From IMG/VR virus record IMGVR_UViG_3300027747_002221, positions 124,001 through 188,000 of that record: a DNA stretch of 64,000 bases. The stretch is one strand, 5' to 3'. The position numbers and the translations under genes are program-made. A model generated the notes under the pieces. It worked only from the letters and a program-made list of their open reading frames with translations, did not search any database and was not told where the DNA came from. Positions 10,319-57,107 of this stretch are shown here, in pieces (position 1 is the first letter of the stretch; each line of letters begins with the position of its first letter).

Positions 10319-10989
10319 ACTTTTTCCTGGAATAATACGTCATCCATAAAACTCATAAACGTATCTTTATCCACACCAAAATTAACCATCATTGCCGGTG
10401 TGTGAGGATTCTTTTTCTGAAACCTACAATAATGATTATGCTTTTCGTAATAGTCTCTATCCGCATAGGGCACTCCTACATTATAAAGGTAAAAGTTTAA
10501 ATTGTCAATAACTGTTTGTTTAAGTTGATCTAATTCTTCCTGCGTTTGTATATTGCCCGCAGCCAGCATATTTGGACTAAAAATTTCAAGTGCCCATTCA
10601 GGTAACTGTCTTGGTTTAGACCAAGTTAATTTAGACATCTTAGTCTGATACCATTCATATAAAAATGAATCTCCAACTTTAGAAAAATCATGAAATGCCC
10701 CAGTAATTTTATTTTGTCCGCAAACTATATCAAAACCAAATATAGGATCAGGGCAATTATAGTGAGGAAAAATACACATATGCATAACCCACATCTTTTT
10801 AGTTGCAGATGCATCTACAATTTCTATATGTGCTCTTCTAAAATTTTTACTAGTCCAGACATAATTTTTCCAAGAAAAATCCACATCAGTATGCGAATAT
10901 TTAGGATTAATTTCTTCTATACTATATAATTTAAATTTATCTATAAGTGTTGTTGATAATGCTTGCGCCTGCGAAAACATTTCAATCAT
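10315..10989 (-). CDS. Ferredoxin-dependent bilin reductase (PcyA/PcyX family)
   Basis: FRRAHIEIVD, VMHMCIFP, PIFGFDIV, GAFHDFS, LPEWALEIFS, QKKNPHT; adjacent to heme oxygenase. Confidence 0.85.
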   Translation of the reverse strand: MIEMFSQAQALSTTLIDKFKLYSIEEINPKYSHTDVDFSWKNYVWTSKNFRRAHIEIVDASATKKMWVMHMCIFPHYNCPDPIFGFDIVCGQNKITGAFHDFSKVGDSFLYEWYQTKMSKLTWSKPRQLPEWALEIFSPNMLAAGNIQTQEELDQLKQTVIDNLNFYLYNVGVPYADRDYYEKHNHYCRFQKKNPHTPAMMVNFGVDKDTFMSFMDDVLFQEKV

Positions 10990-11518
10990 TATATTCTTTT
11001 ACCATTTCAATGTTATGTTTAAATGCTATAATAGCTTCATCTGCTAAAGACACATCCAATTTAGATCTTACTGTTTTAATAAGTGTAGGAATATCCTCAA
11101 ACTTATACATATGCCCACTGCCAGGAGTTAACTTAGCTAGTTGTTGCCCTCCAAACATATCTCCCATATGTCTAACATATACATGAGCTAATAACTTCTT
11201 AGGATCATCTTGTATACTGTCTAAGTATTGTAGATATGTTAGGGTAGACGGTCTAATCTTAAAAACGGTAGTTGCAAGATCTTCACAAAGTTCAGCCCAA
11301 TCCTGTTGTGCTAATTTTGCTCTTTTAAGATCTTCTATACCGTCAAATATAGCATGTTTGGAAGCTAATATTTCCATTAGTCCATATACATGAAATAATT
11401 GATAAACATAATCTGCATATTTTTCTTTATTTACATTGCCTGCAAATATAGATTTTATAAATGGCTGAGATTCTGCTTCCGCATGAACATCGGCTGTCAA
11501 TTCTTTTAGTGTGCTCAA
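10982..11518 (-). CDS. Heme oxygenase (HemO/Ho1-like)
   Basis: LKELTADVHAEAE (proximal His), LLAHVYVRHMGDMFGGQ distal-helix motif. Confidence 0.92.
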   Translation of the reverse strand: MSTLKELTADVHAEAESQPFIKSIFAGNVNKEKYADYVYQLFHVYGLMEILASKHAIFDGIEDLKRAKLAQQDWAELCEDLATTVFKIRPSTLTYLQYLDSIQDDPKKLLAHVYVRHMGDMFGGQQLAKLTPGSGHMYKFEDIPTLIKTVRSKLDVSLADEAIIAFKHNIEMVKEYND

Positions 11519-17173: not shown

Positions 17174-17926
17174 TTATACCAGTTCATACTGGGTTTCGTA
17201 TTTTAACCTTGCTAATATATATTCCTTTACTATAGCAGATCTAACTATATCATCAACTCCGAATTCGAATGTTTTAAAACTTGGCATCATGTCAGCAATG
17301 ACCATAAATTTTTTCAATCCCGACATATCGCTTTTCTTGTATAAATCTGTTTGTCTAAAATCACCGCAAAATATAATTTTGGATCTAACCCCCACTCTAG
17401 TCATTATGGAATTCAATTCCATATCAGTCATGTTTTGACATTCGTCAACTAAAATTATAGAATTGCTTAAAGTTATCCCTCTGACAAAAGATGTAATCAT
17501 AAATTGAACTGCTTTTTGTTCACTCAATCTTTGGAATGCATCTGTTCTATCAAATAGATCCTTGCAAATTTCTACATATGGTTCAGTATATACTTCTGTT
17601 TTTTCTTTTTCGTCCCCAGGTAAATGTCCTATATCCCTGCTAGGTACTGCTGACCTAACTATTACTACTCTCTGATACTGATTCTGTTTATTTAATACTT
17701 CCTCTAATGCGTGATATAATGCTATGTAAGTTTTGCCTGTTCCTGCAACACCGTGTAATAACATAACTTTTGCTTTATCGTATGAATCAAAGAATCCTTT
17801 CTGATTATCTGTTAATGGCTTAATTGTTTTCATGTCATCTAGACACAGTTTCAGTTTATTATTGGCTAATGTTAACTGAGGGGTTTGACTAGATTGCGGT
17901 TGAACACTTGTTCTTGTTTTTGCCAT
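17174..17926 (-). CDS. phoH: PhoH-like ATPase
   Basis: GVAGTGKT, GHLPGDEKEK, SFVRGITL, ILVDECQN, GDFRQTD. Confidence 0.93.
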   Translation of the reverse strand: MAKTRTSVQPQSSQTPQLTLANNKLKLCLDDMKTIKPLTDNQKGFFDSYDKAKVMLLHGVAGTGKTYIALYHALEEVLNKQNQYQRVVIVRSAVPSRDIGHLPGDEKEKTEVYTEPYVEICKDLFDRTDAFQRLSEQKAVQFMITSFVRGITLSNSIILVDECQNMTDMELNSIMTRVGVRSKIIFCGDFRQTDLYKKSDMSGLKKFMVIADMMPSFKTFEFGVDDIVRSAIVKEYILARLKYETQYELV

Positions 17927-39535: not shown

Positions 39536-39931
39536 TTAAGCTTGTGTTTCTAATTTTGGCACAGTAACTGCTGTCCAATTTAATATGGATTCATCCCATG
39601 TATAGAATGTTCCTTCTGTTTCTGTTGTTGGCATAACTGCCTCAGGTTGTGCAACAGGCGGCTGCCAATAGCATGTGTTCTCATCCAAAATCCAGCTTGC
39701 AAAAGGTTGAGGTGCATAAAATGCATCTCTGCCTGCATCATATACATAACCAATGCCTGCGTAGTTTTTACGCAAAGGAGTGCCACCGTTGCGGTGTGTA
39801 CCACCTTGGGTATTGTAACTTGTTTGAACCCAAGTGCCGGGGTCTCCTACAGCACCTGTGTCAATAAAATCTTGATCAGCAACAATAACTTGTGTTACTG
39901 TTCCGTTTTCTACTTTAGCAAAATGTCCCAT
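39536..39931 (-). CDS. Tail-fibre-associated conserved protein
   Basis: MGHFAKVENGTVTQVIV...WVQTSYN...LRKNYAGIGYVYD..RDAFYAPQPF.SW.LDE.TC.W.PP. Confidence 0.7.
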   Translation of the reverse strand: MGHFAKVENGTVTQVIVADQDFIDTGAVGDPGTWVQTSYNTQGGTHRNGGTPLRKNYAGIGYVYDAGRDAFYAPQPFASWILDENTCYWQPPVAQPEAVMPTTETEGTFYTWDESILNWTAVTVPKLETQA

Positions 39932-39980: not shown

Positions 39981-39988
39981 TATTTATA
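39981..39988 (-). promoter_or_regulatory. Late promoter TATAAATA
   Basis: tatttata upstream of the gene starting at 39931. Confidence 0.72.
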
Positions 39989-46399: not shown

Positions 46400-47296
46400 T
46401 TAGAATGTGATTGTACCTGAGCTATAGAATTTATATACAACATATCCGCCTGAAGATGTTACGACTACATTAGATCCTGTGGTACTTGCAGCAGAAAATT
46501 CTGTAGGATGACGTAAAACAACTATACCAGAACCACCTTGTCCAAATTGCCCAGCACCCGATTGTCCGCCACCTCCACCTCCACCTCCGCCGGTGTTAGT
46601 TAAACCATTATTAACTGCGCCGCCGCTTGAAGGTTGTCCTCGGCCACCGCCCCCCGCACCGCCATTTCCTCCGGGTGTGCCGTCGCCACTTCCCCCGCCG
46701 CCGCCGGCATAGGCAACATTTGCACCTGTAATTAAACTATATCTTCCGTCCCCACCGTTACCCACCGTTACACCGTTGCTACCTACAGCACCTGCGCCCC
46801 CTCCCCCGGCGCCAAAGCCGGCGGCGGTTCCACCTGCAAATCCTTCTACCGGAGTATAGCTACCTGCATTGCCCGGACCTGCCTGCCCAATAGTTTGATC
46901 GCCTGCTGATACATAACCGCCACCGCCGCCGCCGGATCCGCCTGATCTACCATGTCTGTTTGCAGGTGTGACAGAATATGTTCCTCCACCTCCACCTCCA
47001 GATGCGGTTATTGTGGAAAATACAGAATTTGTTCCGTTAGCTCCAAAAGTGGCTGCAGTAGTTCCCCCGGCACCTACGGTGACCGTTATTGGGGTTCCCG
47101 GGGTGAAATCACTATAACCTGTATTAGTTCTGTAGCCGCCGCCCCCACCTCCGCCACCTGCTGAATTACCGCCTGAGCCGCCCCCAGCAACAACTAAATA
47201 TTCTAATGTGAGGACAGAACGGAGAGGAACATTTGCCGAATTTAATCGGTTGTTAACATTATTAAAATTTCTTGCCGTATGGCGTTTTGTTGACAT
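46400..47296 (-). CDS. Glycine-rich (polyglycine II) adhesin-like protein 1
   Basis: EYLVVAGGGSGG...GGGGGGG...YAGGGGG...GGSGIVVLR...VYKFYSSGTITF. Confidence 0.75.
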   Translation of the reverse strand: MSTKRHTARNFNNVNNRLNSANVPLRSVLTLEYLVVAGGGSGGNSAGGGGGGGGYRTNTGYSDFTPGTPITVTVGAGGTTAATFGANGTNSVFSTITASGGGGGGTYSVTPANRHGRSGGSGGGGGGYVSAGDQTIGQAGPGNAGSYTPVEGFAGGTAAGFGAGGGGAGAVGSNGVTVGNGGDGRYSLITGANVAYAGGGGGSGDGTPGGNGGAGGGGRGQPSSGGAVNNGLTNTGGGGGGGGGQSGAGQFGQGGSGIVVLRHPTEFSAASTTGSNVVVTSSGGYVVYKFYSSGTITF

Positions 47297-47628
47297 TAGT
47301 ATATCTCTGAACCAAACAGATTAAAGGTTACGTTACCTTGTAACGAGTAAACTTGCACAGTATCTGTTGCATCCAAAGTCATACCAAGTGTTAATGCAAT
47401 TGCATCCTGTGCAGGTAATGCGGTATCATATGCAATATAGGCATTAGATGGTGTTGGGCTGGTACCTCTGGGAATTACTGCAATCCTAAATGTTACATTG
47501 GATTGAGATAAACTACATATATTTAATGTGGAAATAACTGCACTATTTCCTGCAGGTACGGTATATAATGTTGCATTTGCATTTGCTGCAGGAAAAGCCT
47601 GTCCTAGAATTTTATATTTAATTGTCAT
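47296..47628 (-). CDS. Virion structural protein
   Basis: YKILGQAFP...TLYTVPAG..AVISTLNIC. Confidence 0.62.
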   Translation of the reverse strand: MTIKYKILGQAFPAANANATLYTVPAGNSAVISTLNICSLSQSNVTFRIAVIPRGTSPTPSNAYIAYDTALPAQDAIALTLGMTLDATDTVQVYSLQGNVTFNLFGSEIY

Positions 47629-47638
47629 TTTTTTTTCC

Positions 47639-47794
47639 TTACATTCCCGCCAATAGGAATGGACTTAGTGTTTCTATTACAAGAACGGTTTGTCCTGAAG
47701 AATTAATGGTTACAGAGCCTCCACTAATTGTTGCATGAACCGCAGTAATTGCGTTTGCCGATAGTCCATCTTGTTGAATTTGTGTTAGAGCCAT
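47639..47794 (-). CDS. Small structural protein (51 aa)
   Basis: Manual: MALTQIQQDGLSANAIT...LSPFLLAGM; late promoter upstream. Confidence 0.6.
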   Translation of the reverse strand: MALTQIQQDGLSANAITAVHATISGGSVTINSSGQTVLVIETLSPFLLAGM

Positions 47795-47817
47795 TGTTTT
47801 CTCTTATGTTATACTTA

Positions 47818-47825
47818 TATTTATA
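47818..47825 (-). promoter_or_regulatory. Late promoter TATAAATA
   Basis: tatttata upstream of the 47794 operon. Confidence 0.72.
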
Positions 47826-48662
47826 TTAATTCAAATCTTTGTTCTTGATGGAAAAGACCGAACCTTTGTCTATTTCTATTGAATTCCTCAAATTTCTAAT
47901 TTTTGGTCTCCTTTTTTCGCTCTGTAGCATAGAGTTTGCCCCTATTACTAATAGAATAGCTAACGGATCAAACACTATGATTATGAGTAAAATCATCCAT
48001 GATACTGCTTTTTCCAATATACTTGTGTCCGTTGCCCCATACATAAATGCTGCAATATACTTTATAGGACCTACTTCGGCCTCGACCTTTCGTACTTCAG
48101 CTGCGATTGGCGCACGCTCCTCGCTAATGGCAGCAACAATTTTCTGTTCGGCTTGGATCTCAGACTGAAGCCTTGCACGTTCTTTCTGCTGGGCACGTCT
48201 AATAGTAACTGCCTTCTCCGCACCCGTTTCTGAACTGCTTCTTGCCATGACTTGGTCCACTGCCTCATCCATTTGTTTAAGAGCTTTACGGTTCGCATCA
48301 ATATTATCCTTTGCTGCTTTAATCTTTTCGTCATATATGGATATTTTTGCCAGCACGTCACCTGACACTAAATTTTGATCGCTATGGGCTTTGGATAAGA
48401 ATCCGAATATACCCATGGATGTTAGTAGGGATAAAACTACAACACTGGTAATAAAATACGTTTTCATCAATGTGTTTATTTTGTTCCATTGTCTATATAC
48501 GTAGGATGCTGTTACAAGTTTGCCCACTTCAAGAGCTGCGCCCATTATTAGAATAGGAGTTGGGCTAGCTGAAAAGATATAGGTCAATCCCATGATTGAA
48601 AAATATCCTGCTATACCTGAAATAGCTAAAGCTGTTCCCAATAATATAGCTGCAAAAATCAT
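47826..48662 (-). CDS. Membrane protein with central coiled coil
   Basis: Three N-terminal TM segments, coiled coil, EVGPIKYIA, IIIVFDPLAI TM. Confidence 0.72.
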   Translation of the reverse strand: MIFAAILLGTALAISGIAGYFSIMGLTYIFSASPTPILIMGAALEVGKLVTASYVYRQWNKINTLMKTYFITSVVVLSLLTSMGIFGFLSKAHSDQNLVSGDVLAKISIYDEKIKAAKDNIDANRKALKQMDEAVDQVMARSSSETGAEKAVTIRRAQQKERARLQSEIQAEQKIVAAISEERAPIAAEVRKVEAEVGPIKYIAAFMYGATDTSILEKAVSWMILLIIIVFDPLAILLVIGANSMLQSEKRRPKIRNLRNSIEIDKGSVFSIKNKDLN

Positions 48663-49300
48663 TGAGCCATTAACCTATCTACAAAATTTAACAGTAAGGC
48701 GTGATGCTCACCGTTATGGTATTTTCCTTTTAGCCAACTGTAACTATCATACCAAAATTGTTCGCTTTCAGGATGGCAACCTATAAGTCCTATGTTCTTT
48801 TGAATAATCGCCATCGCATCACCGTTTGCATAAGTAGCGATTGTTTTGTAGTTTCCATTACCAACCAGAGCACAACCATCGTAAAAAAACATCTTTGTGT
48901 CAATTCCATCCCAGTTGATTTCAATATTCTTAGCATGAGGTCTCCTTGTGTCAGTTTTTGGTTGCGTGATATATTGTACTGCATCCACTTTATTTAATAT
49001 GTTAAGATAATGACTACCTGCCCAATAGGCACCCATACAGATGCCTAGATATTTGCCGCCACGATTGACAAAATCAATAACACTAGTTTCGTTATGTTTG
49101 AATAAATTTTTGTAACTATTGCTATCCCCAATGCCGCCAGGAACAGCTATCATATCTACATCGTCAAAGAAATTATTTTCTAGTTTATTTTTGGAAAATA
49201 GTTTAAAACTATACTTATTCCCTAACGATTTCATAATACCATTGCCACTCTGCACTGAGCATTTTGGGTCATGGATAAATAATGCTATAGTTTTTTGCAT
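48659..49300 (-). CDS. BPL_N/class I glutamine amidotransferase-like protein
   Basis: VPGGIGD, YLGICMGAY (nucleophile Cys), GLIGCHPE. Confidence 0.8.
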   Translation of the reverse strand: MQKTIALFIHDPKCSVQSGNGIMKSLGNKYSFKLFSKNKLENNFFDDVDMIAVPGGIGDSNSYKNLFKHNETSVIDFVNRGGKYLGICMGAYWAGSHYLNILNKVDAVQYITQPKTDTRRPHAKNIEINWDGIDTKMFFYDGCALVGNGNYKTIATYANGDAMAIIQKNIGLIGCHPESEQFWYDSYSWLKGKYHNGEHHALLLNFVDRLMAQ

Positions 49301-49301
49301 T

Positions 49302-50057
49302 TTAAAATGGTTTCGTTGCGCTCTGTGTCACTGTGCCGTTGTTGGTGACAGTTTGTGTACTTGATGAATCTGTAGTAACAGCTGCACCCAACATTAAATA
49401 TTCAGTATATGCATCAATCGTTAGTTCTATACTGGGAGCTGATACTGTACTATTATTCGTATCATATCTTGCTTCACCTATAGTAACTCTAAAATTAGTT
49501 ATGTAACCGGGAAAATATCCACCATAGTATCTACCCACTTGATCAGATGAACCATACCAATCATACGAATCTATACAAGTTCCTGCAGGAAAACTAGTAG
49601 GATCAAAATTACCTGCTGCAAATGATGCACGATAGCATGTAACAGGTGCACCTGGACTACCCAATGTGCCTACATACATTGTTTCTAAACCATTGGGGTT
49701 GCGGTTTAAAATAATATATTGCCATGTGTTTGTTTGTAATGTTCCAGGAGACCAAGTATAAGTTATTGTGCCATGTCCGCCAGATACATCTAACATGATA
49801 TTATAATCATCAGTTGTAAATAGATGCATACCATATTCATTGGTAGTACCTAACCATCCCCTGGAAGTAAAATCGCTATTATTATAAAACCAGCCTTCTA
49901 TTGTAAAAGCTCCAGCGCTCATAGTTAAACCTGGATTTAAACTCAAATATTGATTGGTGCCGTTAAAACTTAAACTACCTCGTAGTGTGGGACCAGGGAG
50001 AGGCGGGGGAGGAGAAACTGTTATTCCTCCGTTAATTCTTGTCCCATTTATTAGCAT
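49302..50057 (-). CDS. LamG/concanavalin A-like domain virion protein
   Basis: SLSFNGTNQYL, FTIEGWF, WQYI, GYITNFRV. Confidence 0.82.
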   Translation of the reverse strand: MLINGTRINGGITVSPPPPLPGPTLRGSLSFNGTNQYLSLNPGLTMSAGAFTIEGWFYNNSDFTSRGWLGTTNEYGMHLFTTDDYNIMLDVSGGHGTITYTWSPGTLQTNTWQYIILNRNPNGLETMYVGTLGSPGAPVTCYRASFAAGNFDPTSFPAGTCIDSYDWYGSSDQVGRYYGGYFPGYITNFRVTIGEARYDTNNSTVSAPSIELTIDAYTEYLMLGAAVTTDSSSTQTVTNNGTVTQSATKPF

Positions 50058-50065
50058 ATATTTCC

Positions 50066-50746
50066 TTAGAACGGATTCAATGAAGAACTTGTTACAGCAC
50101 CATTATTAGTAATTGTTATATTATTTGTTGACGAATCTTTTAGGAAATTAGCATCATTCGAGGTGTTTAATAATAATTGGGTACCCCCGATTGCACTCAA
50201 TGGTGAGGTAGGGACAGTAATTGTTGATCCGATGTAAAGTGCTGTGCCGCTAACAATTCTAAAATTGCTTATACGACCATTAAAATAACCATTACCTTGC
50301 ACCGCACTATATGCAATATCAATTGATCTATTTGCTGTACTATTATATCCTATGCCACTTTGGGACATTACAGAAACTCCGTTTACATAAAGTGTAAGAG
50401 TTCCACTTGCTCTTACTAATGCAATATGATGCCAGGTCCCTACAGTTATTACTGTATTAGTAGCACTATTGCGTATACCGCCTTCACCAAAGTAGTAAAT
50501 ACCCCCATTACCATTAAGATCTACATTATCACGATCAGAACTAAAATACCACAAACGCCCAGAAAGATTATTGGGGTAAATCCAGGTTTCCATAGTAAAA
50601 TCGTTTGTTCCAAAAGCAAACGCAGAACTTGACGGGGTATTTAAATATTGACTTGTGCCATTAAAGGATAAACTACCCTGCAATACGGGGGCTGCCGGAG
50701 GAGAAATTGTCATTCCACCTTGTTGTCTCATTCCTGTTATTATCAT
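50066..50746 (-). CDS. LamG/concanavalin A-like domain virion protein
   Basis: SLSFNGTSQYL, DFTMETWIY, WHHIALVR...LYVNG, FNGRISNFRIV. Confidence 0.88.
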   Translation of the reverse strand: MIITGMRQQGGMTISPPAAPVLQGSLSFNGTSQYLNTPSSSAFAFGTNDFTMETWIYPNNLSGRLWYFSSDRDNVDLNGNGGIYYFGEGGIRNSATNTVITVGTWHHIALVRASGTLTLYVNGVSVMSQSGIGYNSTANRSIDIAYSAVQGNGYFNGRISNFRIVSGTALYIGSTITVPTSPLSAIGGTQLLLNTSNDANFLKDSSTNNITITNNGAVTSSSLNPF

Positions 50747-50750
50747 ACGG

Positions 50751-51695
50751 TTATCCGGTAAATGTTATCGTTCCTGGTCCAGTAAATGTATAATATACAT
50801 TGCCATTTGAAGTAGTAACAGTGTTACTACCTGTAATATTAGATGTTGCAGTAAAATATGCAGGATGTGCAAAAATAGCCACGCCTGATCCGCCAGCTCC
50901 GCTTGCCGATGTGGCGGTGTGTGCACCAGCACCACCTCCACCGCCGGTATTTACGTTACCGGCAACAGCCTGGAATGCTGTACCTGGCGGATTCTCTCCG
51001 CCGCTCCGTCCGCCTCCGCCGAGGCCACCGGGACTAGGAGCAACGGGAGAAAAACTATAATCTGCAGCTCCACCGCCGCCGCCGGCATAATAATTACCAT
51101 TTACCCATGCATTACCATCGCCGCCATATCCTTGTAATGTTCCAGTTTTTCCTGTAGTACCAGCGCCACCGCCCCCACCGCCATACTGTCCGCCACCTGT
51201 TCTTGAATTTCCTGGGGCGCCAGGATTTCCCTGTCCTGCTGTACCTGTACCGCCCGTATTGTTTGGGCCTCCACTACCTGCTGAATTTCCTGCACCTCCG
51301 CCCGATCCCCCGGGACGACCATTGTACTGTGGTGAGAAGTATCCTGTGCCGCCACCGCCACCGCCTGCAGCAGTTAATGTGCCTGTTAACGGAGAAGCTA
51401 AGATTGAGGGTGTACCGGGTTCGCCCCAGTTACCGCCATATGGCGCGCCAGCATTTCCTGCACCACCGCCACCTATTTGTGTAACGGCAAAGCTAGCAAA
51501 CACTCCTGTTGATAATACAAAACTGTTTGCAATATATCCACCTGCACCACCGCCGCCACCATAATAATTGGCACCTCCACCGCCGCCTCCGCCAACCAAT
51601 AGATATGATAATGTAAAGGGCGGGGGTGGGGGTGGCGGTGGTTCGATGTATTGTGCGCCGCCAGATAATACTGCGCCGCCTGTTAAAATTAACAT
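50751..51695 (-). CDS. Glycine-rich adhesin-like protein 2
   Basis: Leader + poly-Pro + polyglycine motifs; ends TFTGPGTITFTG. Confidence 0.75.
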   Translation of the reverse strand: MLILTGGAVLSGGAQYIEPPPPPPPPFTLSYLLVGGGGGGGANYYGGGGGAGGYIANSFVLSTGVFASFAVTQIGGGGAGNAGAPYGGNWGEPGTPSILASPLTGTLTAAGGGGGGTGYFSPQYNGRPGGSGGGAGNSAGSGGPNNTGGTGTAGQGNPGAPGNSRTGGGQYGGGGGGAGTTGKTGTLQGYGGDGNAWVNGNYYAGGGGGAADYSFSPVAPSPGGLGGGGRSGGENPPGTAFQAVAGNVNTGGGGGAGAHTATSASGAGGSGVAIFAHPAYFTATSNITGSNTVTTSNGNVYYTFTGPGTITFTG

Positions 51696-51704
51696 ATTAT
51701 TTCC

Positions 51705-52847
51705 TTAAAATAAGATTGTACCTGAGCTGGTAAATTGATAAACTCTATATCCACCACTTACTGTTATTGTAGGTGAGCCGGTAGTTGTAGTAGCTGCTGT
51801 GTAAGTATCAGGATAACGTATAATTACTATACCTTTACCGCCTGCACCGCTTGGACCACCGCCACCTCCGCCTCCACCGGTATTTTCTGCTCCGTCTAAT
51901 ATGCAGTTTGCAATGGCATTAGTTTGCCCTGGTTTTGCACCACCGCCGCCTGCGCCGCCATACCCTACTCTACGTCCTGCGCCGCCACCTGCATAATACC
52001 TACCTGTACTAGTAATTGCTACTCCTGTATTTGTAGCTGTACCGTTTACATTCATGTAATAAATACCTGTACTACCTGTACCCGTACCTCTTGCAATTAT
52101 ATACGAATTAGCTGGAATTCCGGTACCAGTAACTTGTGTACCTACATCAATTATTCCATCACTAACTGCGGTTACAGTTAATGTATTATTTGAGGAAAAT
52201 ACTGATGCTGTTCCAGTGAAAGGAATTGTTGCATTGCTTTTTACCCCAATGCCACCAAAGCCCTCTGTAGCGGCTGTGCCACCTTGACCACCTGCACCAC
52301 CACCACCCGAACCGTTATCGTTACTATTATTTGTACCGCAATCATATCCCTGGCCGGTAGTTCCTAAACCTTGTACACCCATAATTTGGGCGGCACCTCC
52401 ACCACTACCACCATTACCAACACCTTCTGTGTCATAACGGCGAGGCGAAGTGCCAGAGCTGTTTGGTCCGCCAGCGCCGCCACCAAGTGATGTAATTGTT
52501 GTTATACCACTACCAGATATGGACGAGTTACTACCTTTAAATCCGGAAGTTTCTTCACCATTTACGCTTGCACCACCTGCACCAACTGTAATAGTGTATG
52601 TTACATTTGAACTAATACCAGTTAAGACAGATTCTGCATTTGCACCTCTACCTGAAGATTCGCCGGCGATTGAAGAACGATATCCACCAGCACCACCGCC
52701 ACCTGAGCCAATTGCATCATATCCTCCACCGGAGCCGCCGCCTGCAACAACTATAAATTCTAACGTAGTAGGGGGAGGAGGTGGGGGAGGAGGTATATAT
52801 GTTGCGCCTCCAAATATTGTTGCTCCGCCTGTGATTGTAATTGGCAT
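51705..52847 (-). CDS. Glycine-rich adhesin-like protein 3 (with inserted domain)
   Basis: Same scaffold; extra segment of about 70 aa before YYAGGG. Confidence 0.75.
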   Translation of the reverse strand: MPITITGGATIFGGATYIPPPPPPPPTTLEFIVVAGGGSGGGYDAIGSGGGGAGGYRSSIAGESSGRGANAESVLTGISSNVTYTITVGAGGASVNGEETSGFKGSNSSISGSGITTITSLGGGAGGPNSSGTSPRRYDTEGVGNGGSGGGAAQIMGVQGLGTTGQGYDCGTNNSNDNGSGGGGAGGQGGTAATEGFGGIGVKSNATIPFTGTASVFSSNNTLTVTAVSDGIIDVGTQVTGTGIPANSYIIARGTGTGSTGIYYMNVNGTATNTGVAITSTGRYYAGGGAGRRVGYGGAGGGGAKPGQTNAIANCILDGAENTGGGGGGGGPSGAGGKGIVIIRYPDTYTAATTTTGSPTITVSGGYRVYQFTSSGTILF

Positions 52848-52859
52848 CTTATTTCCTAA

Positions 52860-53816
52860 TTAAAATGTGATTGTTCCTGAGCTGGTCCAAATATATATTC
52901 TATATCCACCTTCTATAATAACATTTGGACTGCCCGTAGTATTCGATGCGGCTGTGTATGTATCTGCATATCTAATAATAGCTACACCTTTTCCGCCGTT
53001 CCCTCCACTTGCTGATCCTGCTGGGTATGAAACTCCTCCACCACCACCGCCTGTGCCTGAAGTTCCATTTGTTCCTGGTATACTCGCGCCGGTGGCGCCT
53101 GCTCCGCCACCACCAGCTCCACCAGCTCCACCTGCGGCACTTGCTCCACCCCCACCGCCGCCGCCGGCGAAATATACATTACTGCCAACAACATTTCCTA
53201 TATTATAAGTTGTGGCTTGTGTTGTAGTAATGATTGTCGAAACTTTACCGATACCACCCGCTTTGCCTGTAGTGCCAACGCTCGCCCCGTCCTCACCTGC
53301 AGCACCTGCTCCACCTCCGCCTCCGCCTGAATAAGCTCCGCCAGTACCACCACGATTACCAAATCCTCCACTAGCACTAGTAGGTTGTAGTCCTGCCCCA
53401 TATGTGGTATGATCGGCTCCGTTCCACGATGCTCCGCCACCTGAACCACCTGCTGTGGCATTTGTATATGGACCATAAAAACCACCCGTGCCTCCACCAA
53501 TAGCTATAACATTACTCGAAGCCAAGATAGATGAGTTCGAACCATTATTGCCGCCGCCGCCGGTGCCGCTTACGCCTGTTCCACCTGCTCCAACAATTAC
53601 TGTTATGAGAGACCCTATGGTAATAGGTAATGCAGTATTTGCTACATATCCTCCTGCACCACCACCACCGCACCCTAAATTAGGAGCACTTGCGCCCGAA
53701 CCACCGCCAGCTACTACCAGATATTCTACTGAACTAAGTACCGGTGGAGGAGAAGGTGGAGGAGGTGTTAAATTAAATCCTGAAAGTGATACGCCGCCTG
53801 AGATTGTAATTGGCAT
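52860..53816 (-). CDS. Glycine-rich adhesin-like protein 4
   Basis: Same scaffold; ends WTSSGTITF. Confidence 0.75.
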   Translation of the reverse strand: MPITISGGVSLSGFNLTPPPPSPPPVLSSVEYLVVAGGGSGASAPNLGCGGGGAGGYVANTALPITIGSLITVIVGAGGTGVSGTGGGGNNGSNSSILASSNVIAIGGGTGGFYGPYTNATAGGSGGGASWNGADHTTYGAGLQPTSASGGFGNRGGTGGAYSGGGGGGAGAAGEDGASVGTTGKAGGIGKVSTIITTTQATTYNIGNVVGSNVYFAGGGGGGGASAAGGAGGAGGGGAGATGASIPGTNGTSGTGGGGGGVSYPAGSASGGNGGKGVAIIRYADTYTAASNTTGSPNVIIEGGYRIYIWTSSGTITF

Positions 53817-53824
53817 CTTATTTC

Positions 53825-53884
53825 CTACCTAAATGTAATTGTTCCAGATTGCCAGAATCTGAAAATGATGTTTTGCGTTTGCAT
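53825..53884 (-). pseudogene. Orphan C-terminal remnant of a glycine-rich paralog (19 codons)
   Basis: MQTQNIIFRFWQSGTITFR, versus NIIYRFWQSGTIIFN at the end of 54824..55774. Confidence 0.8.
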
Positions 53885-53888
53885 AAAT

Positions 53889-54815
53889 TTATCCAACGAA
53901 TCTTATTGTGCCAGGACCAGTAAATGTATAATATACATTGCCATCTAAAGTAGTAACAGTATTACTACCTGTAATATTAGATGTTGCGGTAAAGTACGAA
54001 GGATGTGCAAAAATAACTACCCCTGATCCTCCAGATCCTCCGGCAGTGGCTCCACCTGCCGGATGGGAACCTGCGCCGCCACCGCCCCCAGTATTTACGT
54101 TGCCTGCAAGAGCAAGGAATGTTGTTCCCGGAGGATTTGCGCCGGATCCTCGACCGCCGCCGCCTAAACCACCAGGAGAAGGTGATAGGTTAGCAAAATT
54201 ATAATCTTGCCCACCTCCTCCTCCGCCTGCATAGTAATTACCATTTATCCATGCATTACCGTCACCACCTTGACCTTGCAAGGGACCTGTTCTTCCTGCA
54301 GTACCAGCACCACCGCCCCCACCTCCAGTTTGTCCAAGGGGTGGTCTTGAATTTGCAATTCCGCCAGGATTTCCTTGTCCAGCTGTACCTGCACCTCCAG
54401 TATTAGCTGGTCCTGAGTTGCCAGATGGATTTGCTGCTCCGCCACCCGATCCGCCAGATAGTCCATTAAAGTTAACGCCATCATTTGTACCGCCACCACC
54501 ACCACCTACGGCAATAAGATTTGCACTAAATGCTGCAGAAGATAGGGTTGACGGGGTGCCACTTGCACCTGCTGCACCGCCCCCAGCACCCCCGCCCCCC
54601 AGTGTAAAATTAAAACTATACGAAGATAAGGTGGGCACCACAATACTATTGGCAATATAGCCTCCAGCACCGCCGCCTCCAGCATAAAATGCCCCGCCGC
54701 CGCCACCCCCGCCTGCTACTAATAGATAACTTAATGTAAAGGGTGGTGGTGGCGGAGGTGGAGGGGTAAGGGTAAGCCCTGAAAATATTACACCGCCGCT
54801 AATTGTTAATGCCAT
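53889..54815 (-). CDS. Glycine-rich adhesin-like protein 5
   Basis: Close paralog of 50751..51695. Confidence 0.75.
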   Translation of the reverse strand: MALTISGGVIFSGLTLTPPPPPPPPFTLSYLLVAGGGGGGGAFYAGGGGAGGYIANSIVVPTLSSYSFNFTLGGGGAGGGAAGASGTPSTLSSAAFSANLIAVGGGGGGTNDGVNFNGLSGGSGGGAANPSGNSGPANTGGAGTAGQGNPGGIANSRPPLGQTGGGGGGAGTAGRTGPLQGQGGDGNAWINGNYYAGGGGGGQDYNFANLSPSPGGLGGGGRGSGANPPGTTFLALAGNVNTGGGGGAGSHPAGGATAGGSGGSGVVIFAHPSYFTATSNITGSNTVTTLDGNVYYTFTGPGTIRFVG

Positions 54816-54823
54816 ATTGTTTC

Positions 54824-55774
54824 CTAATTAAAAATAATTGTTCCGGATTGCCAGAATCTGTAGATGATGTTGGCATTGGCATAGGTTACGTTTGGTGAAC
54901 CTGTGGTTGTTGCAGTTGCAAATGTATTTGGATAACGAATAAACGCAATACCAGAACCACCAGCAACACCATTAATAAATGGTGATCCGCTTGGGGAGGT
55001 TCCTCCACCGCCTGCACCACCTCCAGTATTTACGGTACCTACAGTACCCAAACCTGAGCCCACCGCCCCTGCGCCACCGCCACCTAAACCGCCTGTGCCT
55101 GCAGTTCCTCTACCGTTCCATGTGCCGCCACCACCACCGCCAGCATAATACACATTAGCACCTGTTATTGTAGAGGGTGATCCGTCTCCGCCTGAACCAG
55201 CACCACCAGCTCCGCCAGATCCACCAACTGCTCCTGCACCACCTCCACCCCCACCTCCATAATTATTACCAGGTGAACCCGACCCACCAGGATTGCCTTG
55301 TCCAGGCGTCCCTGTTCCGGCAGCACCTGCCGTTGGAGCAGGACCATAGCCTCCACCTCCACCTGATCCTCCAGGTTTTCCTGCATAACCAGTAGCAGAA
55401 GTTATACCGCCACCGCCACCGCCGCCAATGGCAATTACATTTGATGCATAGGATGCTGCAGTTATCGAAGTATTTGCGCCATTTGCACCTGCAAGAGTAG
55501 CTTCTACGTTAGCAGAACCTATACCTCCAGCACCACCTGCGCCAACTGTTATTGTATATAACGTACCGGGAGTGACTGCCAATGCACTATTGGTTATTAA
55601 TCCTCCTGCGCCAGCTCCAGCAACACCACCATCATTACCAACAGTGGCCCCTGAACCACCGCCCCCCGCAACAACTAAATATTGTACTGAACTAAGTGGG
55701 ACAGGTGGAGGTGGTTCAGATGCATATAACGCGCCGCCTACTAATGCCATTCCGCCTGTGATTGTAATTGACAT
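54824..55774 (-). CDS. Glycine-rich adhesin-like protein 6
   Basis: Same scaffold; ends RFWQSGTIIFN. Confidence 0.75.
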   Translation of the reverse strand: MSITITGGMALVGGALYASEPPPPVPLSSVQYLVVAGGGGSGATVGNDGGVAGAGAGGLITNSALAVTPGTLYTITVGAGGAGGIGSANVEATLAGANGANTSITAASYASNVIAIGGGGGGGITSATGYAGKPGGSGGGGGYGPAPTAGAAGTGTPGQGNPGGSGSPGNNYGGGGGGGAGAVGGSGGAGGAGSGGDGSPSTITGANVYYAGGGGGGTWNGRGTAGTGGLGGGGAGAVGSGLGTVGTVNTGGGAGGGGTSPSGSPFINGVAGGSGIAFIRYPNTFATATTTGSPNVTYANANIIYRFWQSGTIIFN

Positions 55775-55783
55775 ATTATGTTC

Positions 55784-56701
55784 CTAACTAAATGTGATTG
55801 TTCCTGAGCTATAGAAGTTGTATACAACATTTCCACCTGAAGATGTTACAACTACATTAGCTCCTGTGGTATTTGCAGCAGAATATGCAGAAGGATGACG
55901 CAAAACAACTAATCCAGACCCGCCGGTTGCTCCCACCCCTCCATACGAACTAGCCCAACCGCCACCGCCACCGCCACCACCAGTATTAGTATTACCATCT
56001 ATGCCGGCATTATTACTGAAATTACCAGCGCCACCGCCGCCTGTGCCACCTGTACCTTGTGTACCTGGTCCATTTCTAGTTCCGCCTCCACCGCCGCCTG
56101 CGTAATTTAATCCAGTTATACTAGATGATGTGCCAGCTCCACCATTACCAGCAACACCCGGTGTTATCCCATTTGCATTTACACCTGCAGAAGCAGAGCC
56201 ACCGCCACCGCCACCCAAATACGCGGGTGAAGTAGTGCCTGTGCCGCCTGCGTATCCTTCTACCGGACTATAACTGCCTTCATTTCCTGTGCCTCCTAAT
56301 GGGTGTCCTCCAGAACCACCTCCGCCGGATCCGCCATTTTGTCCCGGAAGCGTACCTGGCCCTTGATCTGCGCCGACCCCGCCACCTCCGCCAGTAGTGG
56401 AAATACTAACCACACCGCCTATTAATGATGAATTGGCGCCTTTGCCGCCCTGTTGAAGAGCACCGGCATTGGCCTGCCCTGCAGAACCTCCGCTGCCAAC
56501 AGTAATAGTATATGGGGTGCCTGGGGCAATAGTTACGGTAGATTGTCTTAATCCTCCAGCACCACCGCCTCCCCCGCTATTACCGGCACCTCCGCCCCCA
56601 CCTGCAACTATTAGATAATCTATTAAACTAAGTGGGGGAAGCGGCACAAATACGGATAGCCCGTTTGATATTGCCACTCCGCCTGTGAATATAACTGGCA
56701 T
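55784..56701 (-). CDS. Glycine-rich adhesin-like protein 7
   Basis: C-terminus closely matches 46400..47296. Confidence 0.75.
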   Translation of the reverse strand: MPVIFTGGVAISNGLSVFVPLPPLSLIDYLIVAGGGGGAGNSGGGGGAGGLRQSTVTIAPGTPYTITVGSGGSAGQANAGALQQGGKGANSSLIGGVVSISTTGGGGGVGADQGPGTLPGQNGGSGGGGSGGHPLGGTGNEGSYSPVEGYAGGTGTTSPAYLGGGGGGSASAGVNANGITPGVAGNGGAGTSSSITGLNYAGGGGGGTRNGPGTQGTGGTGGGGAGNFSNNAGIDGNTNTGGGGGGGGWASSYGGVGATGGSGLVVLRHPSAYSAANTTGANVVVTSSGGNVVYNFYSSGTITFS

Positions 56702-56702
56702 A

Positions 56703-57107
56703 TTATTTTCCTATTTTTATATGCGTTCTATGTACTCTGCATTGTATTTGGCCATTATAATAATCTTCAGTTTCCAATACTCTGCGATCCATTTGTTCTC
56801 TTGCCTCAAGATAATTACAAGATCCCTTATTGGGACAAATATGTAATATCTCTCTTATAAATTTATCTGTTCCAACTGTCTCTACATCCTTTTTAACTTC
56901 TTCGGATGAGGACCAATAATCTCGCCAATCTGATTCGACCTTTATACGCTTCTTTTTGCCCTTAACCTGTTTAGTTTTACGAAACCAAAAAAGTTTTTTA
57001 CCTATGTATTTCCGTCCAGTAACAGTATTTGTAATCAAATATACATAACCATACGCAGTTTCTGGTATTTCCTCAAAGGGAATATTATTATAAAGCCACA
57101 TAAACAC
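56703..57107 (-). CDS. GIY-YIG nuclease (Seg-like, short)
   Basis: YGYVYLITNTVTGRKYIGKK...WRDYWSS...REILH. Confidence 0.82.
   Translation of the reverse strand: MFMWLYNNIPFEEIPETAYGYVYLITNTVTGRKYIGKKLFWFRKTKQVKGKKKRIKVESDWRDYWSSSEEVKKDVETVGTDKFIREILHICPNKGSCNYLEAREQMDRRVLETEDYYNGQIQCRVHRTHIKIGK

What the first reader, a model, noticed from the sequence alone, without database searches (positions are those of the whole stretch)
46400..56701. Array of seven polyglycine adhesin-like paralogs with hypervariable loops
Seen: seven genes of 298-380 aa share the scaffold (Y/F)(L/I)(V/L)V(A/G)GGG...GGGAGG...GGSGGG...YAGGG...NTGGGGG...GG(S/K)G(V/I)...SGTITF, with unrelated loops between the glycine runs. 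Two carry insertions at the same point before Y(Y/F)AGGG (about 70 aa in 51705..52847). Pairs share near-identical DNA ends (50779-50890 with 53917-54030; the 3' ends of 46400 and 55784). Known: glycine runs of this kind form polyglycine-II sandwiches in T-even gp38 adhesins, whose loops set receptor specificity, and T-even phages carry one gp38. Inference: a multi-adhesin repertoire diversified by intra-array recombination, giving either mixed virions or multivalent display. No reverse transcriptase or invertase is present in the window.
Basis: partly seen in the sequence, partly recalled or inferred. Interest (0 to 1): 0.8.

Follow-up and report, generated by a model that had tools for sequence, protein, structure and literature searches.

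The report
Strain-variable array of polyglycine tail proteins
A freshwater T4-like cyanophage carries seven genes of a known glycine-rich phage tail "brush" family. Six sit in a tandem block whose copy number and content differ between closely related strains, so the phage probably has a swappable set of host-binding heads.

Summary
The seven ORFs are real. All belong to Pfam PF21722 (Gly_rich_2, PHROG 2295). That family also holds Bxb1 gp33, the "tail wing brush" solved in PDB 9D93. They are not T-even gp38 relatives: no GP38 HMM hit, hhalign probability 0.5%, and 6F45 is absent from the fold hits. A confident AF2 model of G4 (pLDDT 91) matches Bxb1 gp33 best, then the Pam3 fiber gp24.

The layout is six tandem genes (G1-G6) plus one copy (G7) 3.4 kb away. 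G1-G6 and the two Laminin_G_3 genes that follow share an N-terminal hairpin-like peptide and a polyproline linker.

G7 sits in a module conserved across relatives: a 110-aa adaptor gene (fused to the domain in another phage), one Gly_rich_2 gene, and a 131-aa gene (phrog_7759). That 131-aa gene lies next to Gly_rich_2 genes in many phages and weakly resembles the Pam3 fiber chaperone.

Between flanks that are 85-100% identical, relatives carry 0, 3, 4 or 6 copies. Synonymous divergence jumps inside the block, paralog ends are homogenised, and a vestigial gene end remains.

The "near-identical ends" are 85-87% identical. No reverse transcriptase or invertase was found. Virion location and receptor binding are inferred, not shown.

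The parts
55784..56701 (-). G1, Gly_rich_2 paralog (305 aa), first gene of the tandem block
   Evidence: PF21722 E=6e-21, PHROG 2295 E=1e-40. Ortholog at 93-96% aa identity in L019/L105.
54824..55774 (-). G2, Gly_rich_2 paralog (316 aa)
   Evidence: PF21722 E=2e-18. dS to the L019 counterpart is 0.49 against 0.05-0.23 in the flanks, and the differences fall mostly in the loops between glycine runs.
53889..54815 (-). G3, Gly_rich_2 paralog (308 aa), closest paralog of G6 (70% aa)
53825..53887 (-). Vestigial 3' end of a G2-like paralog inside the 72-nt G3-G4 spacer
   Evidence: The spacer translates to a stretch ending ..NIIFRFWQSGTITFR-stop, against G2's C-terminus ..NIIYRFWQSGTIIFN. Repeat D14 pairs 53743-53872 with 54742-54871 at 75%.
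52860..53816 (-). G4, Gly_rich_2 paralog (318 aa); this is the protein that was modelled
   Evidence: PF21722 E=3e-21. AF2 pLDDT 90.9, pTM 0.88. Foldseek hits: 9D93 Qa/Qb (Bxb1 gp33) E=2e-5 and the Pam3 fiber 7YPX_A E=1e-3.
51705..52847 (-). G5, Gly_rich_2 paralog (380 aa) with a domain-sized insertion (about aa 203-280, nt 52008-52241)
   Evidence: Alignment. The insertion weakly resembles 70-90-aa repeats of large structural proteins next to Gly_rich_2 genes elsewhere (L014, L011, S-RSM4 gene 038; E=1e-3 to 1e-7, composition correction off).
50751..51695 (-). G6, Gly_rich_2 paralog (314 aa), last of the tandem block
50066..50746 (-). LamG1, Laminin_G_3 (concanavalin-like lectin fold) protein with an N-terminal hairpin and Pro linker of the G1-G6 kind
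   Evidence: PF13385 E=1e-19. N-terminus read (MIITGMRQQGGMTISPP). Laminin_G_3 is inserted inside the Gly_rich_2 domain in the closest database homologs, P0002-P0005.
49302..50057 (-). LamG2, second Laminin_G_3 protein with the shared N-terminal module
   Evidence: PF13385 E=1e-6. Motif scan. dS 0.83 to the L019 allele.
47296..47628 (-). o110, 110-aa adaptor-like protein whose stop overlaps the G7 start (ATGA)
   Evidence: 36% identity (E=4e-18) to the N-terminal 109 aa of L010 4260-5444, where that domain is fused to a Gly_rich_2 domain. L010 also holds the split pair 5838-6170 / 6167-6997. Conserved in front of the single Gly_rich_2 gene in many relatives.
46400..47296 (-). G7, the dispersed Gly_rich_2 copy (298 aa). 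It lacks the hairpin/polyPro N-terminus and is probably the ancestral copy.
   Evidence: PF21722 E=7e-21. Its position matches the single copy in relatives (TM278-o110-Gly-...-o131-endolysin). Its 3' 45 codons have dS 0.34 against G1, versus 2.29 in the body.
39536..39931 (-). o131 (phrog_7759, no Pfam): candidate assembly chaperone or partner of Gly_rich_2 proteins
   Evidence: A homolog lies directly next to a Gly_rich_2 gene in all 9 of the 12 Gly_rich_2-anchored loci (L003-L014) where the contig extends past the Gly_rich_2 gene, and in HTVC025P, HTVC103P, Bellamy and Melnitz (twice). AF2 pLDDT 95. The only PDB fold hit with probability above 0.2 is 7YPX chain a, the Pam3 gp25 chaperone (E=0.56, prob 0.72).
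56703..57107 (-). SegE-like GIY-YIG domain gene; its 3' end is the upstream boundary of the variable block
   Evidence: PF19835 E=4e-38. Conserved at 64-100% in relatives that share the o122-segE neighbourhood, while what follows it varies.
48659..49300 (-). 213-aa BPL_N-like (glutamine-amidotransferase-like) gene; downstream boundary of the variable block, used as an anchor
   Evidence: PF09825 E=2e-10.

Best explanation
The seven genes encode members of the Gly_rich_2 family, also called the polyglycine-rich or 'brush' domain. The domain is a beta-sandwich carrying a bundle of polyglycine strands. The glycine runs are conserved and the connecting loops vary. In solved phage structures such domains sit at the distal, host-facing end of the tail.

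In this freshwater T4-like cyanomyovirus one copy (G7) belongs to a conserved unit. That unit has a small adaptor protein (o110), the head domain, and further downstream a small chaperone-like protein (o131).

Six further copies and two lectin-fold (Laminin_G_3) proteins form a lineage-specific cassette block between the SegE-like gene and the 213-aa gene. All eight cassette proteins begin with the same kind of module: a roughly 16-residue hairpin-like peptide followed by a polyproline linker. I infer that this module docks alternative heads onto one kind of site on the virion. Particles would then display several, or mixed, host-surface-binding heads.

The repertoire changes by duplication, loss and allelic replacement of whole cassettes. 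The recombination uses the homogenised 5' and 3' gene ends. It does not use a reverse transcriptase or an invertase.

Shown: family membership, fold class, shared N-terminal module, conserved gene partners, strain-level variation, mosaic ends.
Inferred: virion location, the docking role of the N-terminus, receptor binding, the chaperone role of o131.
For: - Family: PF21722 at 44-77 bits (cutoff 24.3) for all seven; PHROG 2295. Bxb1 gp33, the 'tail wing brush' that attaches to gp30 in the virion (PMC12646305, PMC13243192), also hits PF21722 at E=1e-11.
- Fold: the G4 model has pLDDT 91. Best PDB matches are 9D93 Qa/Qb at E=2e-5, the Pam3 fiber at E=1e-3, then the ALK glycine-rich domain weakly. 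BFVD gives 139 viral matches at E<=1e-3.
- Tail context: G7 lies two genes upstream of a homolog of S-PM2 p175, annotated there as a virion structural protein (the S-RSM4 record says a related S-PM2 structural protein was identified by MS). In HTVC025P, Bellamy and Melnitz the family's genes lie among annotated tail-fibre genes.
- Shared N-terminus: found only in G1-G6 and LamG1/2 within the window. Analogous hairpin motifs occur in the arrays of L010, L011 and L014. The first 20 residues of the model have pLDDT 60-70, which fits a peptide that folds on binding.
- Partners: the o110 fusion; o131 adjacency and its weak resemblance to gp25.
- Plasticity: blastn and blastp maps of L019, L020, L021 and L098-L136; dS; homogenised ends; vestigial end.
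- Possible expression: identical pieces of G1, G2, G4, G5 and G6 in a lake metatranscriptome.
Against: - No virion proteomics or structure exists for this phage, so location is inferred from relatives.
- Fold matches to solved structures have modest TM-scores (0.30-0.48), and the family profiles barely detect any PDB chain by sequence.
- In Bxb1 the genes around 33 are missing from a close relative, and the gene 30 deletion mutant, which is expected to lose gp33 from the virion, is viable. Brush proteins can therefore be dispensable accessories rather than primary receptor binders.
- The window holds one o131 gene for seven heads, and it is 6.5 kb from G7.
- The o131-gp25 fold match is weak (E=0.56).
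- The window genotype is 100% identical across several IMG/VR samples, and Logan contigs are colinear. Variation is seen between lineages, not within one population.
- The RNA evidence could be contaminating DNA.
Confidence: 0.6

Rival explanations
1. One reading: these are gp38-type adhesins that cap a gp37-like long tail fibre, as in T2, T6 and S16, but present in seven versions.
For: Both have glycine-rich motifs forming polyglycine bundles with variable loops (PMC9608196 and bioRxiv 10.1101/2023.11.25.568672). The phage is T4-like: gp53, gp48, gp25-like, gp32 and gp59 homologs.
Against: No GP38 or Gp38_N HMM hit at E<=0.01, whereas S16 gp38 scores 4e-73. hhalign probability is 0.5%. 6F45 is not among the fold hits. 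No gp37-like gene lies upstream: G1 follows nucleotide-metabolism genes and the SegE-like gene, and G7 follows o110. The N-termini are a beta/Pro module, not the gp38 helical attachment domain.
Confidence: 0.05
2. They are virion-associated but are not specific receptor binders. They would be accessory 'brush' decorations giving weak, generic contact with envelope lipids or glycans, or stabilising the tail. The array would then vary mostly by neutral gain and loss.
For: The Bxb1 gene 30-35 region, which includes the brush gene 33, is absent from a close relative, and deleting gene 30 reduces fecundity only modestly. Brush fingers are proposed to touch lipid-rich surfaces non-specifically (PMC13243795, PMC13252515). 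dN/dS of G1 and G2 against L019 is 0.18-0.30, so it is not above 1. Relatives with no tandem copies exist (L021, L110/L111).
Against: Cassette alleles are far more divergent than the flanks (dS 0.49-0.83 vs 0.05-0.23). Replacements fall mostly in the loops while the scaffold is kept. Lectin-fold heads share the same N-terminal module. A Gly_rich_2 gene, usually with o110 and/or o131, is retained in many of the relatives sampled far enough downstream.
Confidence: 0.22
3. They are not virion components. They would be made in the infected cell for another purpose, such as modifying the cell surface, excluding superinfecting phages, or binding ice or a matrix through the polyglycine bundle.
For: There is no direct evidence of virion incorporation. 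The tandem block sits beside nucleotide-metabolism genes rather than in the main structural cluster. No T4-late-type TATAAATA lies directly upstream of G1.
Against: No signal peptide or transmembrane segment is apparent by eye in the translations. The family includes a solved virion protein. Across cultured phages the genes lie among tail-fibre genes and pair with a Tfa-like small gene. G7 is embedded among structural genes.
Confidence: 0.1

Closest known systems
Mycobacteriophage Bxb1 gp33, 'tail wing brush' (PDB 9D93), and the polyglycine-rich/brush domains of mycobacteriophage minor tail proteins
   Same: Same Pfam family: PF21722 hits gp33 at E=1e-11. It is the best PDB fold match of the G4 model (E=2e-5, prob 1.0). 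It is a small stand-alone protein made almost only of this domain, and it attaches through another tail protein rather than forming a fibre shaft.
   Different: Bxb1 gene 33 is a single gene. Here there are seven genes, six of them tandem, with a shared hairpin and polyPro N-terminus. The host is Gram-negative-type (probably a cyanobacterium) rather than a mycobacterium. TM-scores are only 0.30-0.48, and hhalign aligns only 64 columns.
Cyanophage Pam3 tail fibre gp24 with its chaperone gp25 (PDB 7YPX/7YFW)
   Same: A beta-sandwich (TNF-like) from which a multilayer glycine-rich lattice extends, with variable distal loop tips proposed to bind the receptor. It is the third-best fold match (E=1e-3, prob 1.0) and the top PDB hit of the family profile by sequence (E=0.09). 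A small neighbouring gene is needed for assembly and is absent from virions. o131's only notable fold hit is that chaperone.
   Different: gp24 trimerises through a long N-terminal helical bundle that docks to the baseplate. The window proteins have no such helix. Pam3 has a single fibre gene. The resemblance of o131 to gp25 is weak (E=0.56) and covers only part of it.
T-even (T2/T6/S16) gp38 adhesin (PF05268, PDB 6F45)
   Same: A polyglycine-II bundle scaffold with conserved glycine-rich motifs and hypervariable receptor-binding loops. Host range is altered by loop changes.
   Different: No detectable sequence or profile homology. No Foldseek match. The attachment domain and genomic context differ, and there is one gene per genome.
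Phages with several receptor-binding proteins, and the hyperplastic tail-fibre regions of T4-like phages (from general knowledge, not tested here)
   Same: Several alternative host-binding modules are encoded side by side and exchanged by recombination at conserved junctions. The variable block lies between conserved flanks.
   Different: Here the modules are small single-domain heads sharing one short N-terminal peptide, not long fibres or tailspikes with conserved N-terminal anchor domains. Arrays reach 11-12 domains in other contigs.

Membership tests
Pfam PF21722 Gly_rich_2 (polyglycine-rich / 'brush' domain; includes Bxb1 gp33) | Score above the curated gathering threshold of the family HMM over most of its length | tested here: met
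   All seven score 44.2-76.9 bits against a cutoff of 24.3. Six cover about positions 11-225 of 226 in one stretch; G5 is split by its insertion. PHROG 2295 E=7e-27 to 3e-46.
Pfam PF21722 Gly_rich_2 (polyglycine-rich / 'brush' domain; includes Bxb1 gp33) | Domain ends at the protein's C-terminus with the conserved strands (..GGSG-hydrophobic strand.. / ..Y-x-F-x-x-S-G-T/S-I-T-F) | tested here: met
   Present in all seven and in nearly all of the 120 database homologs, where the domain envelope ends at the last residue.
Pfam PF21722 Gly_rich_2 (polyglycine-rich / 'brush' domain; includes Bxb1 gp33) | Fold like a solved member | tested here: met
   Foldseek of the G4 model against PDB: 9D93 Qa/Qb at E=2.4e-5 and 1.2e-4, prob 1.0, TM 0.30-0.48. 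I assign these chains to gp33 from their length (229-230 of 267 aa) and the published chain description. The TM-scores are modest.
Pfam PF21722 Gly_rich_2 (polyglycine-rich / 'brush' domain; includes Bxb1 gp33) | Located on the virion tail | not testable with these tools
   Context only: neighbours homologous to genes annotated as virion structural or tail-fibre proteins.
T-even gp38 adhesin (PF05268 GP38 + PF21721 Gp38_N) | Sequence or profile homology to gp38 | tested here: not met
   No GP38 or Gp38_N hit at E<=0.01; S16 gp38 scores 4e-73 and 1e-19. hhalign of A2 against S16 gp38 gives probability 0.5%. BLASTP E>=12.
T-even gp38 adhesin (PF05268 GP38 + PF21721 Gp38_N) | Fold match to S16 gp38 (6F45) | tested here: not met
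   6F45 is not among the 43 PDB matches with E<=10.
T-even gp38 adhesin (PF05268 GP38 + PF21721 Gp38_N) | Gene directly downstream of the distal long-tail-fibre gene 37 | tested here: not met
   The SegE-like gene and nucleotide-metabolism genes lie upstream of G1; o110 lies upstream of G7.
T-even gp38 adhesin (PF05268 GP38 + PF21721 Gp38_N) | Conserved glycine-rich motifs separated by variable loops | tested here: met
   This is a shared design, not evidence of membership.
Pam3 gp24-type fibre with gp25-type chaperone | TNF-like sandwich plus glycine-rich lattice | tested here: inconclusive
   Foldseek 7YPX_A at E=1.4e-3, prob 1.0, TM 0.35/0.42. Profile against PDB sequence E=0.087-0.088.
Pam3 gp24-type fibre with gp25-type chaperone | N-terminal alpha-helical trimerisation and baseplate-docking domain | tested here: not met
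   The model's only helix is a 6-residue one at 198-203. The N-terminus is hairpin-like and Pro-rich.
Pam3 gp24-type fibre with gp25-type chaperone | Dedicated small chaperone gene next to the fibre gene | tested here: inconclusive
   The phrog_7759 gene is adjacent in 9 of 9 informative loci and in 4 cultured phages. Its likeness to gp25 is weak: Foldseek E=0.56, prob 0.72; atlas cosine 0.55-0.59 to tail-fibre-assembly families.
Diversity-generating retroelement target or invertase-switched (shufflon-type) tail fibre | Reverse transcriptase with template/variable repeat pair, or a site-specific invertase with inverted crossover sites | tested here: not met
   No RT or recombinase domain in any scan. 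The longest direct-repeat pairs are 72-87% identical, with no near-identical template/variable pair. All copies lie on one strand.

The most novel reading that the evidence does not exclude
A plug-and-play receptor-binding system in aquatic phages. A short universal N-terminal docking peptide (hairpin plus polyproline spacer) would let many alternative single-domain heads load onto the same virion site. The heads are polyglycine 'brush' domains and lectin-fold domains, and a conserved Tfa-like chaperone (phrog_7759) would help them fold. A single genome would then produce multivalent or heterogeneous particles. Lineages would re-tool host range by whole-cassette exchange at homogenised gene ends. 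Arrays of up to about 12 domains in other large phages would be the same system.
Probability: 0.3. Interest if true: 0.8.

Novelty: new variant of a known kind. Interest (0 to 1): 0.6.

Why it matters
Polyglycine 'brush' domains have only recently been seen in solved phage tails (S16, Pam3, Bxb1). Authors there still ask how widespread they are (PMC13243795). Here the Bxb1-type family turns out to be very large: 31,418 cluster representatives at E<=1e-3. It is common in aquatic phages of cyanobacteria, SAR11 and OM43.

It is repeatedly organised as tandem gene arrays with a conserved small partner gene. I found no paper describing these arrays or this partner.

The strain-level series of 0, 3, 4 and 6 cassettes between near-identical flanks is a natural experiment on how uncultured freshwater cyanophages change their host-contact surface. 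It also yields concrete testable parts: a docking peptide, an adaptor domain and a chaperone candidate. If the heads set host range, the arrays would be useful markers for phage-host matching in metagenomes.

Tried and rejected
- tblastn of full-length G4 against GenBank phages found nothing, because the low-complexity filter masks the query. The non-glycine C-terminal 48 aa did find pelagiphage homologs.
- megablast of 16 kb against the phages collection: no match.
- The A1 profile against PDB sequences gave only a spurious glycine-rich hit, IC140.
- o110 against the DUF7936 gene that precedes the Gly_rich_2 gene in L014: no similarity.
- NCBIfam: no family for any of the proteins.
- Read laying reported many 'joints' across the array. 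All have short sides (18-26 nt) in GGN-rich runs at 85% likeness, so I treat them as cross-matches from other paralogs or organisms, not as rearrangements.
- SNPs of the 2022 strain (X7) are 14 nonsynonymous of 33 listed, with no DGR-like pattern.
- TATAAATA late-promoter motifs are not enriched in the window (11 found, 9.8 expected). The two upstream of o110 and o131 are only suggestive.
- A role for the SegE-like endonuclease in driving exchange was considered. The gene is vertically conserved in relatives that share the o122-segE neighbourhood, so it is not a recent invader. This stays speculation.
- The Bxb1 Cell paper and the Cambillau & Goulet paper could not be read. Statements about gp33 come from papers that cite them.

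Full report
**What is there.** The region holds seven minus-strand ORFs at the stated coordinates:
- G1 55784-56701
- G2 54824-55774
- G3 53889-54815
- G4 52860-53816
- G5 51705-52847
- G6 50751-51695
- G7 46400-47296

They are 298-380 aa long and 27-33% glycine. Their GC content is 47-53% against a window background of about 36%. They align end to end, and 51 of the 63 invariant columns are Gly. Pairwise identity is 40-56%, and 70% for G3/G6. Outside glycine positions it is 24-45%, and 64% for G3/G6.

G1-G6 are tandem, with gaps of 8-12 nt and one of 72 nt. G7 lies 3,454 nt downstream, behind two Laminin_G_3 genes, a 213-aa BPL_N-like gene, a 278-aa membrane protein and a 110-aa gene. G5 carries an insertion of about 75 aa, and G4 one of about 15-20 aa, at the same point.

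The 'near-identical' ends are 85% identical over 157 nt and 87% over 134 nt, with 60-nt windows reaching 90-93%.

**What they are.** All seven pass the Pfam PF21722 (Gly_rich_2) threshold and match PHROG 2295, which has no known function.

The family is very large. A profile of the seven finds 31,418 representatives at E<=1e-3 among 1.84 billion proteins. These include giant proteins with up to 17 matched stretches. In most of the 120 nearest homologs the domain is C-terminal and preceded by Ig-like, fn3 or cadherin-like domains. In the closest ones a Laminin_G_3 domain is inserted inside it.

An AF2 model of G4 is confident (pLDDT 90.9, pTM 0.88). It has beta strands at both ends and long non-helix, non-strand glycine segments. 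Its best PDB matches are:
- chains Qa/Qb of the Bxb1 tail tip 9D93 (E=2e-5, prob 1.0);
- the cyanophage Pam3 fibre 7YPX_A (E=1e-3, prob 1.0);
- the ALK glycine-rich domain, weakly.

Bxb1 gene 33 encodes a 267-aa minor tail protein, which fits the 229-230 modelled residues. It is described as the 'tail wing brush' and contains a polyproline-II/polyglycine bundle (PMC13243192, PMC12646305). It hits PF21722 itself at E=1e-11 and aligns to the family profile by hhalign at E=3e-5 over 64 columns.

In the viral structure library 139 proteins match at E<=1e-3. They are mostly named 'Glycine-rich domain-containing protein'. They come from uncultured Caudovirales, pelagiphage HTVC025P, Synechococcus phage Bellamy, cyanophage S-TIM4, prasinoviruses and Halorubrum phage HF2.

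**Not gp38.** S16 gp38, fetched from its genome record, belongs to PF05268 and PF21721. The window proteins hit neither. hhalign of the 63-sequence family alignment against S16 gp38 gives probability 0.5%, and BLASTP finds nothing. 6F45 is not among the 43 fold matches. The comparison with gp38 is therefore an analogy of design, not kinship: a polyglycine bundle with variable loops.

**The genome.** There is no near match among GenBank phages. The window encodes these T4-type proteins:
- baseplate proteins gp53, gp48-like and T4_baseplate;
- gp32, gp59, DNA ligase;
- NrdA and NrdB, dCMP deaminase, PhoH;
- a heme oxygenase plus a ferredoxin-dependent bilin reductase.

The 989-aa gene two genes downstream of G7 is 40% identical to S-PM2 p175, which is annotated as a virion structural protein. 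The S-RSM4 record notes that a related S-PM2 structural protein was identified by MS. The DNA occurs in freshwater and lake metagenomes. I infer a freshwater T4-like cyanomyovirus.

**A shared N-terminal module.** G1-G6 begin with about 16 residues of alternating hydrophobic positions and a GG turn, for example M-P-I-T-I-T-G-G-x-x-x-x-G-G. A polyproline stretch follows, and then the first domain strand. LamG1 and LamG2 begin the same way. No other ORF in the window does.

Tandem paralogs in unrelated contigs (L010, L011, L014) have analogous hairpin-like N-termini. Single-copy homologs elsewhere do not. The first 20 residues of the G4 model have pLDDT 60-70. I infer a common docking peptide on a rigid spacer. 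This is not shown.

**Conserved partners.**

(a) The 110-aa gene whose stop overlaps the G7 start is 36% identical (E=4e-18) to the N-terminal domain of a 394-aa L010 protein. In that protein the domain is fused to a Gly_rich_2 domain. L010 also has the split arrangement with the same 4-nt overlap.

(b) The 131-aa gene at 39536-39931 (phrog_7759, no Pfam) has a homolog immediately next to a Gly_rich_2 gene in L003-L007, L009-L011 and L014. These are all of the 12 loci fetched with the Gly_rich_2 query in which sequence continues past the gene.

The same adjacency holds in cultured phages:
- HTVC025P gp43/gp44;
- HTVC103P gp66/gp65;
- Bellamy genes 33/34;
- Melnitz genes 171/172 and 175/176.

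All of these lie in neighbourhoods annotated as structural or tail-fibre genes. In S-TIM4 the two genes are 2.8 kb apart.

Its AF2 model is confident (pLDDT 95). The only PDB match with probability above 0.2 is 7YPX chain a (E=0.56, prob 0.72). That chain is the 162-residue Pam3 chaperone gp25, which is absent from virions. The nearest named clusters in the ESM Atlas are tail-fibre-assembly families, at weak scores of 0.55-0.59. The chaperone assignment is a lead supported by strong synteny, not a demonstrated function.

**Comparative evidence for a hyperplastic block.** IMG/VR loci were anchored on the 213-aa gene and on the 122-aa gene upstream of the SegE-like gene.

The same flanks recur at 85-100% aa identity: nrdB, dCMP deaminase, cytidylyltransferase, o122 and segE-like on one side, and the 213-aa gene and TM278 on the other. 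The content between them differs:

| Loci | Content between the SegE-like gene and the 213-aa gene |
|---|---|
| L018, L098, L100-L102 (window genotype, 100% identical; L099 and L104 end inside the block) | G1-G6, LamG1, LamG2 |
| L019 / L105 | G1' (93%), G2' (94%), a G2-like copy (78%), a G3-like copy (66%), then LamG genes |
| L020 / L109 | three divergent copies |
| L021 | none; blastn joins window 56703 directly to 50063 |
| L110 / L111 | only a LamG1 ortholog (97%) |
| L112 | six copies in another order |

Against L019, dS is 0.05-0.23 in the flanks and 0.11 in G1, but 0.49 in G2 and 0.83 in LamG2. The G2 replacements fall mostly in the loops between glycine runs. That pattern fits allelic replacement rather than in-situ divergence.

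More distant relatives keep a compact unit: TM278, o110, sometimes a LamG gene, one Gly_rich_2 gene, o131, then the endolysin (L117, L118, L122, L123, L135, L150). L131 has the same order with two o131 copies, and L126-L128 lack o110. G7 with o110 and o131 therefore looks ancestral, and G1-G6 look like a lineage-specific expansion.

**Footprints of recombination within the array.** The last 45 codons of G1 and G7 have dS 0.34 against 2.29 in the body. Their identical-codon share among identical residues is 0.76 against 0.28. For G3/G6 the dS values are 0.46 against 1.25. The first 30 codons of tandem copies have dS 0.4-0.6 against 1.7-2.0 in the body. These segments are short, so the estimates are rough.

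The 72-nt G3-G4 spacer contains a vestigial G2-like C-terminus followed by the usual ribosome-binding stretch. The junction unit (3' end, spacer, 5' end) recurs as a repeat (D7 and D14). It also recurs in L020 at 80-82%.

**Population data.** Logan contigs of two 2017 freshwater runs are identical and colinear over long pieces that bridge the gene junctions. A 2022 run from another study is colinear, with 0-4.5% differences per piece and a 6-nt deletion at 53559. A lake metatranscriptome holds identical pieces of G1, G2, G4, G5 and G6, which is compatible with transcription but does not prove it. The listed SNPs are a mix of synonymous and nonsynonymous changes. Glycine codons change only synonymously. 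The reported joints are unreliable (see Tried and rejected).

So the array is stable within a genotype and varies between lineages.

**Other arrays.** L010 (from a 202-kb contig) has 11 domains in 9 ORFs. L011 has 12 in 8. L004 and L005 have 4 each, L013 has 3 and L014 has 2. Some ORFs hold two fused domains.

**Verdict.** This is a real, well-defined gene family array. The domain family is known and has a solved member. The gp38 assignment is wrong. The inference of a recombining repertoire is right in outline.

Three things appear to be undescribed:
- the organisation itself: tandem small heads with a common N-terminal peptide, sharing it with lectin-fold heads;
- the conserved adaptor and chaperone-like partners;
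- the strain-level cassette series.

Noticed in passing
window 39536-39931 (-); L167 4001-4378; L168 5001-5435; L170 8001-8372 and 10631-11014; L015 8153-8473: A 110-145-aa protein family (phrog_7759, no Pfam, at least 7,995 database relatives) lies directly downstream of Gly_rich_2 genes in myoviruses and podoviruses of cyanobacteria, SAR11 and OM43. Its only notable fold hit is the Pam3 fibre chaperone gp25, so it may be an unnamed tail-fibre assembly factor family.
   Followed up: partly
window 47296-47628 (-); L010 4260-5444 and 5838-6997: The 110-aa gene overlapping the G7 start is a separate gene here, but in another phage the same domain is fused to the N-terminus of a Gly_rich_2 protein. 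This is a Rosetta-stone link suggesting that the two proteins associate.
   Followed up: partly
window 56703-57107 (-): A SegE-like GIY-YIG domain gene sits exactly at the upstream edge of the hypervariable block. It is itself vertically conserved (64-100%) in relatives that share the o122-segE neighbourhood. Whether its nuclease activity promotes exchange of the adjacent cassettes is unknown.
   Followed up: partly
window 53825-53887 (-): The G3-G4 spacer keeps about 20 codons of the C-terminus of a lost G2-like paralog, ending in a stop. It is a scar of an internal deletion or replacement.
   Followed up: yes
window 10315-11518 (-), 17174-17926 (-): Heme oxygenase, a ferredoxin-dependent bilin reductase and PhoH are typical cyanophage auxiliary genes and point to a cyanobacterial host for this freshwater phage.
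   Followed up: no
window 6129-8036 (+): A 635-aa ORF on the opposite strand to most genes, in a stretch with very strong AT skew (+0.32). It has no Pfam hit even at E<=1 and no PHROG hit at E<=1e-5, and it overlaps two minus-strand ORFs. It may be an unusual protein or not a gene.
   Followed up: no
window 3541-3999 (+): A TnsA-like endonuclease N-terminal domain protein lies among the baseplate genes. It is possibly another homing-type nuclease.
   Followed up: no
window 47818-47825 and 39981-39988 (-): T4-late-promoter-like TATAAATA boxes lie just upstream of o110/G7 and of o131. None lies directly upstream of G1. The motif is not enriched in the window overall.
   Followed up: partly
P0121-P0270; L010 7002-8669 and 10448-12172; L011 3400-5178, 8677-10389, 10385-12142: The same domain occurs as tandem repeats inside single polypeptides: double-domain ORFs in phage arrays, and giant proteins of 3,000-7,000 aa with up to 17 matched stretches. 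Gene arrays and domain arrays seem to interconvert.
   Followed up: no
The DUF4407-like membrane protein (TM278) recurs beside it in many related loci. Both are of unknown role and lie between the tandem block and G7.
   Followed up: no
L111 (nGly=4) and L112: Relatives with no tandem block after the SegE-like gene (L111) still carry Gly_rich_2 domains further downstream, near the o155/p175-like/o251 structural genes. One ORF best matching o251 has two such domains. L112 has six copies interleaved with the anchor and LamG genes.
   Followed up: no
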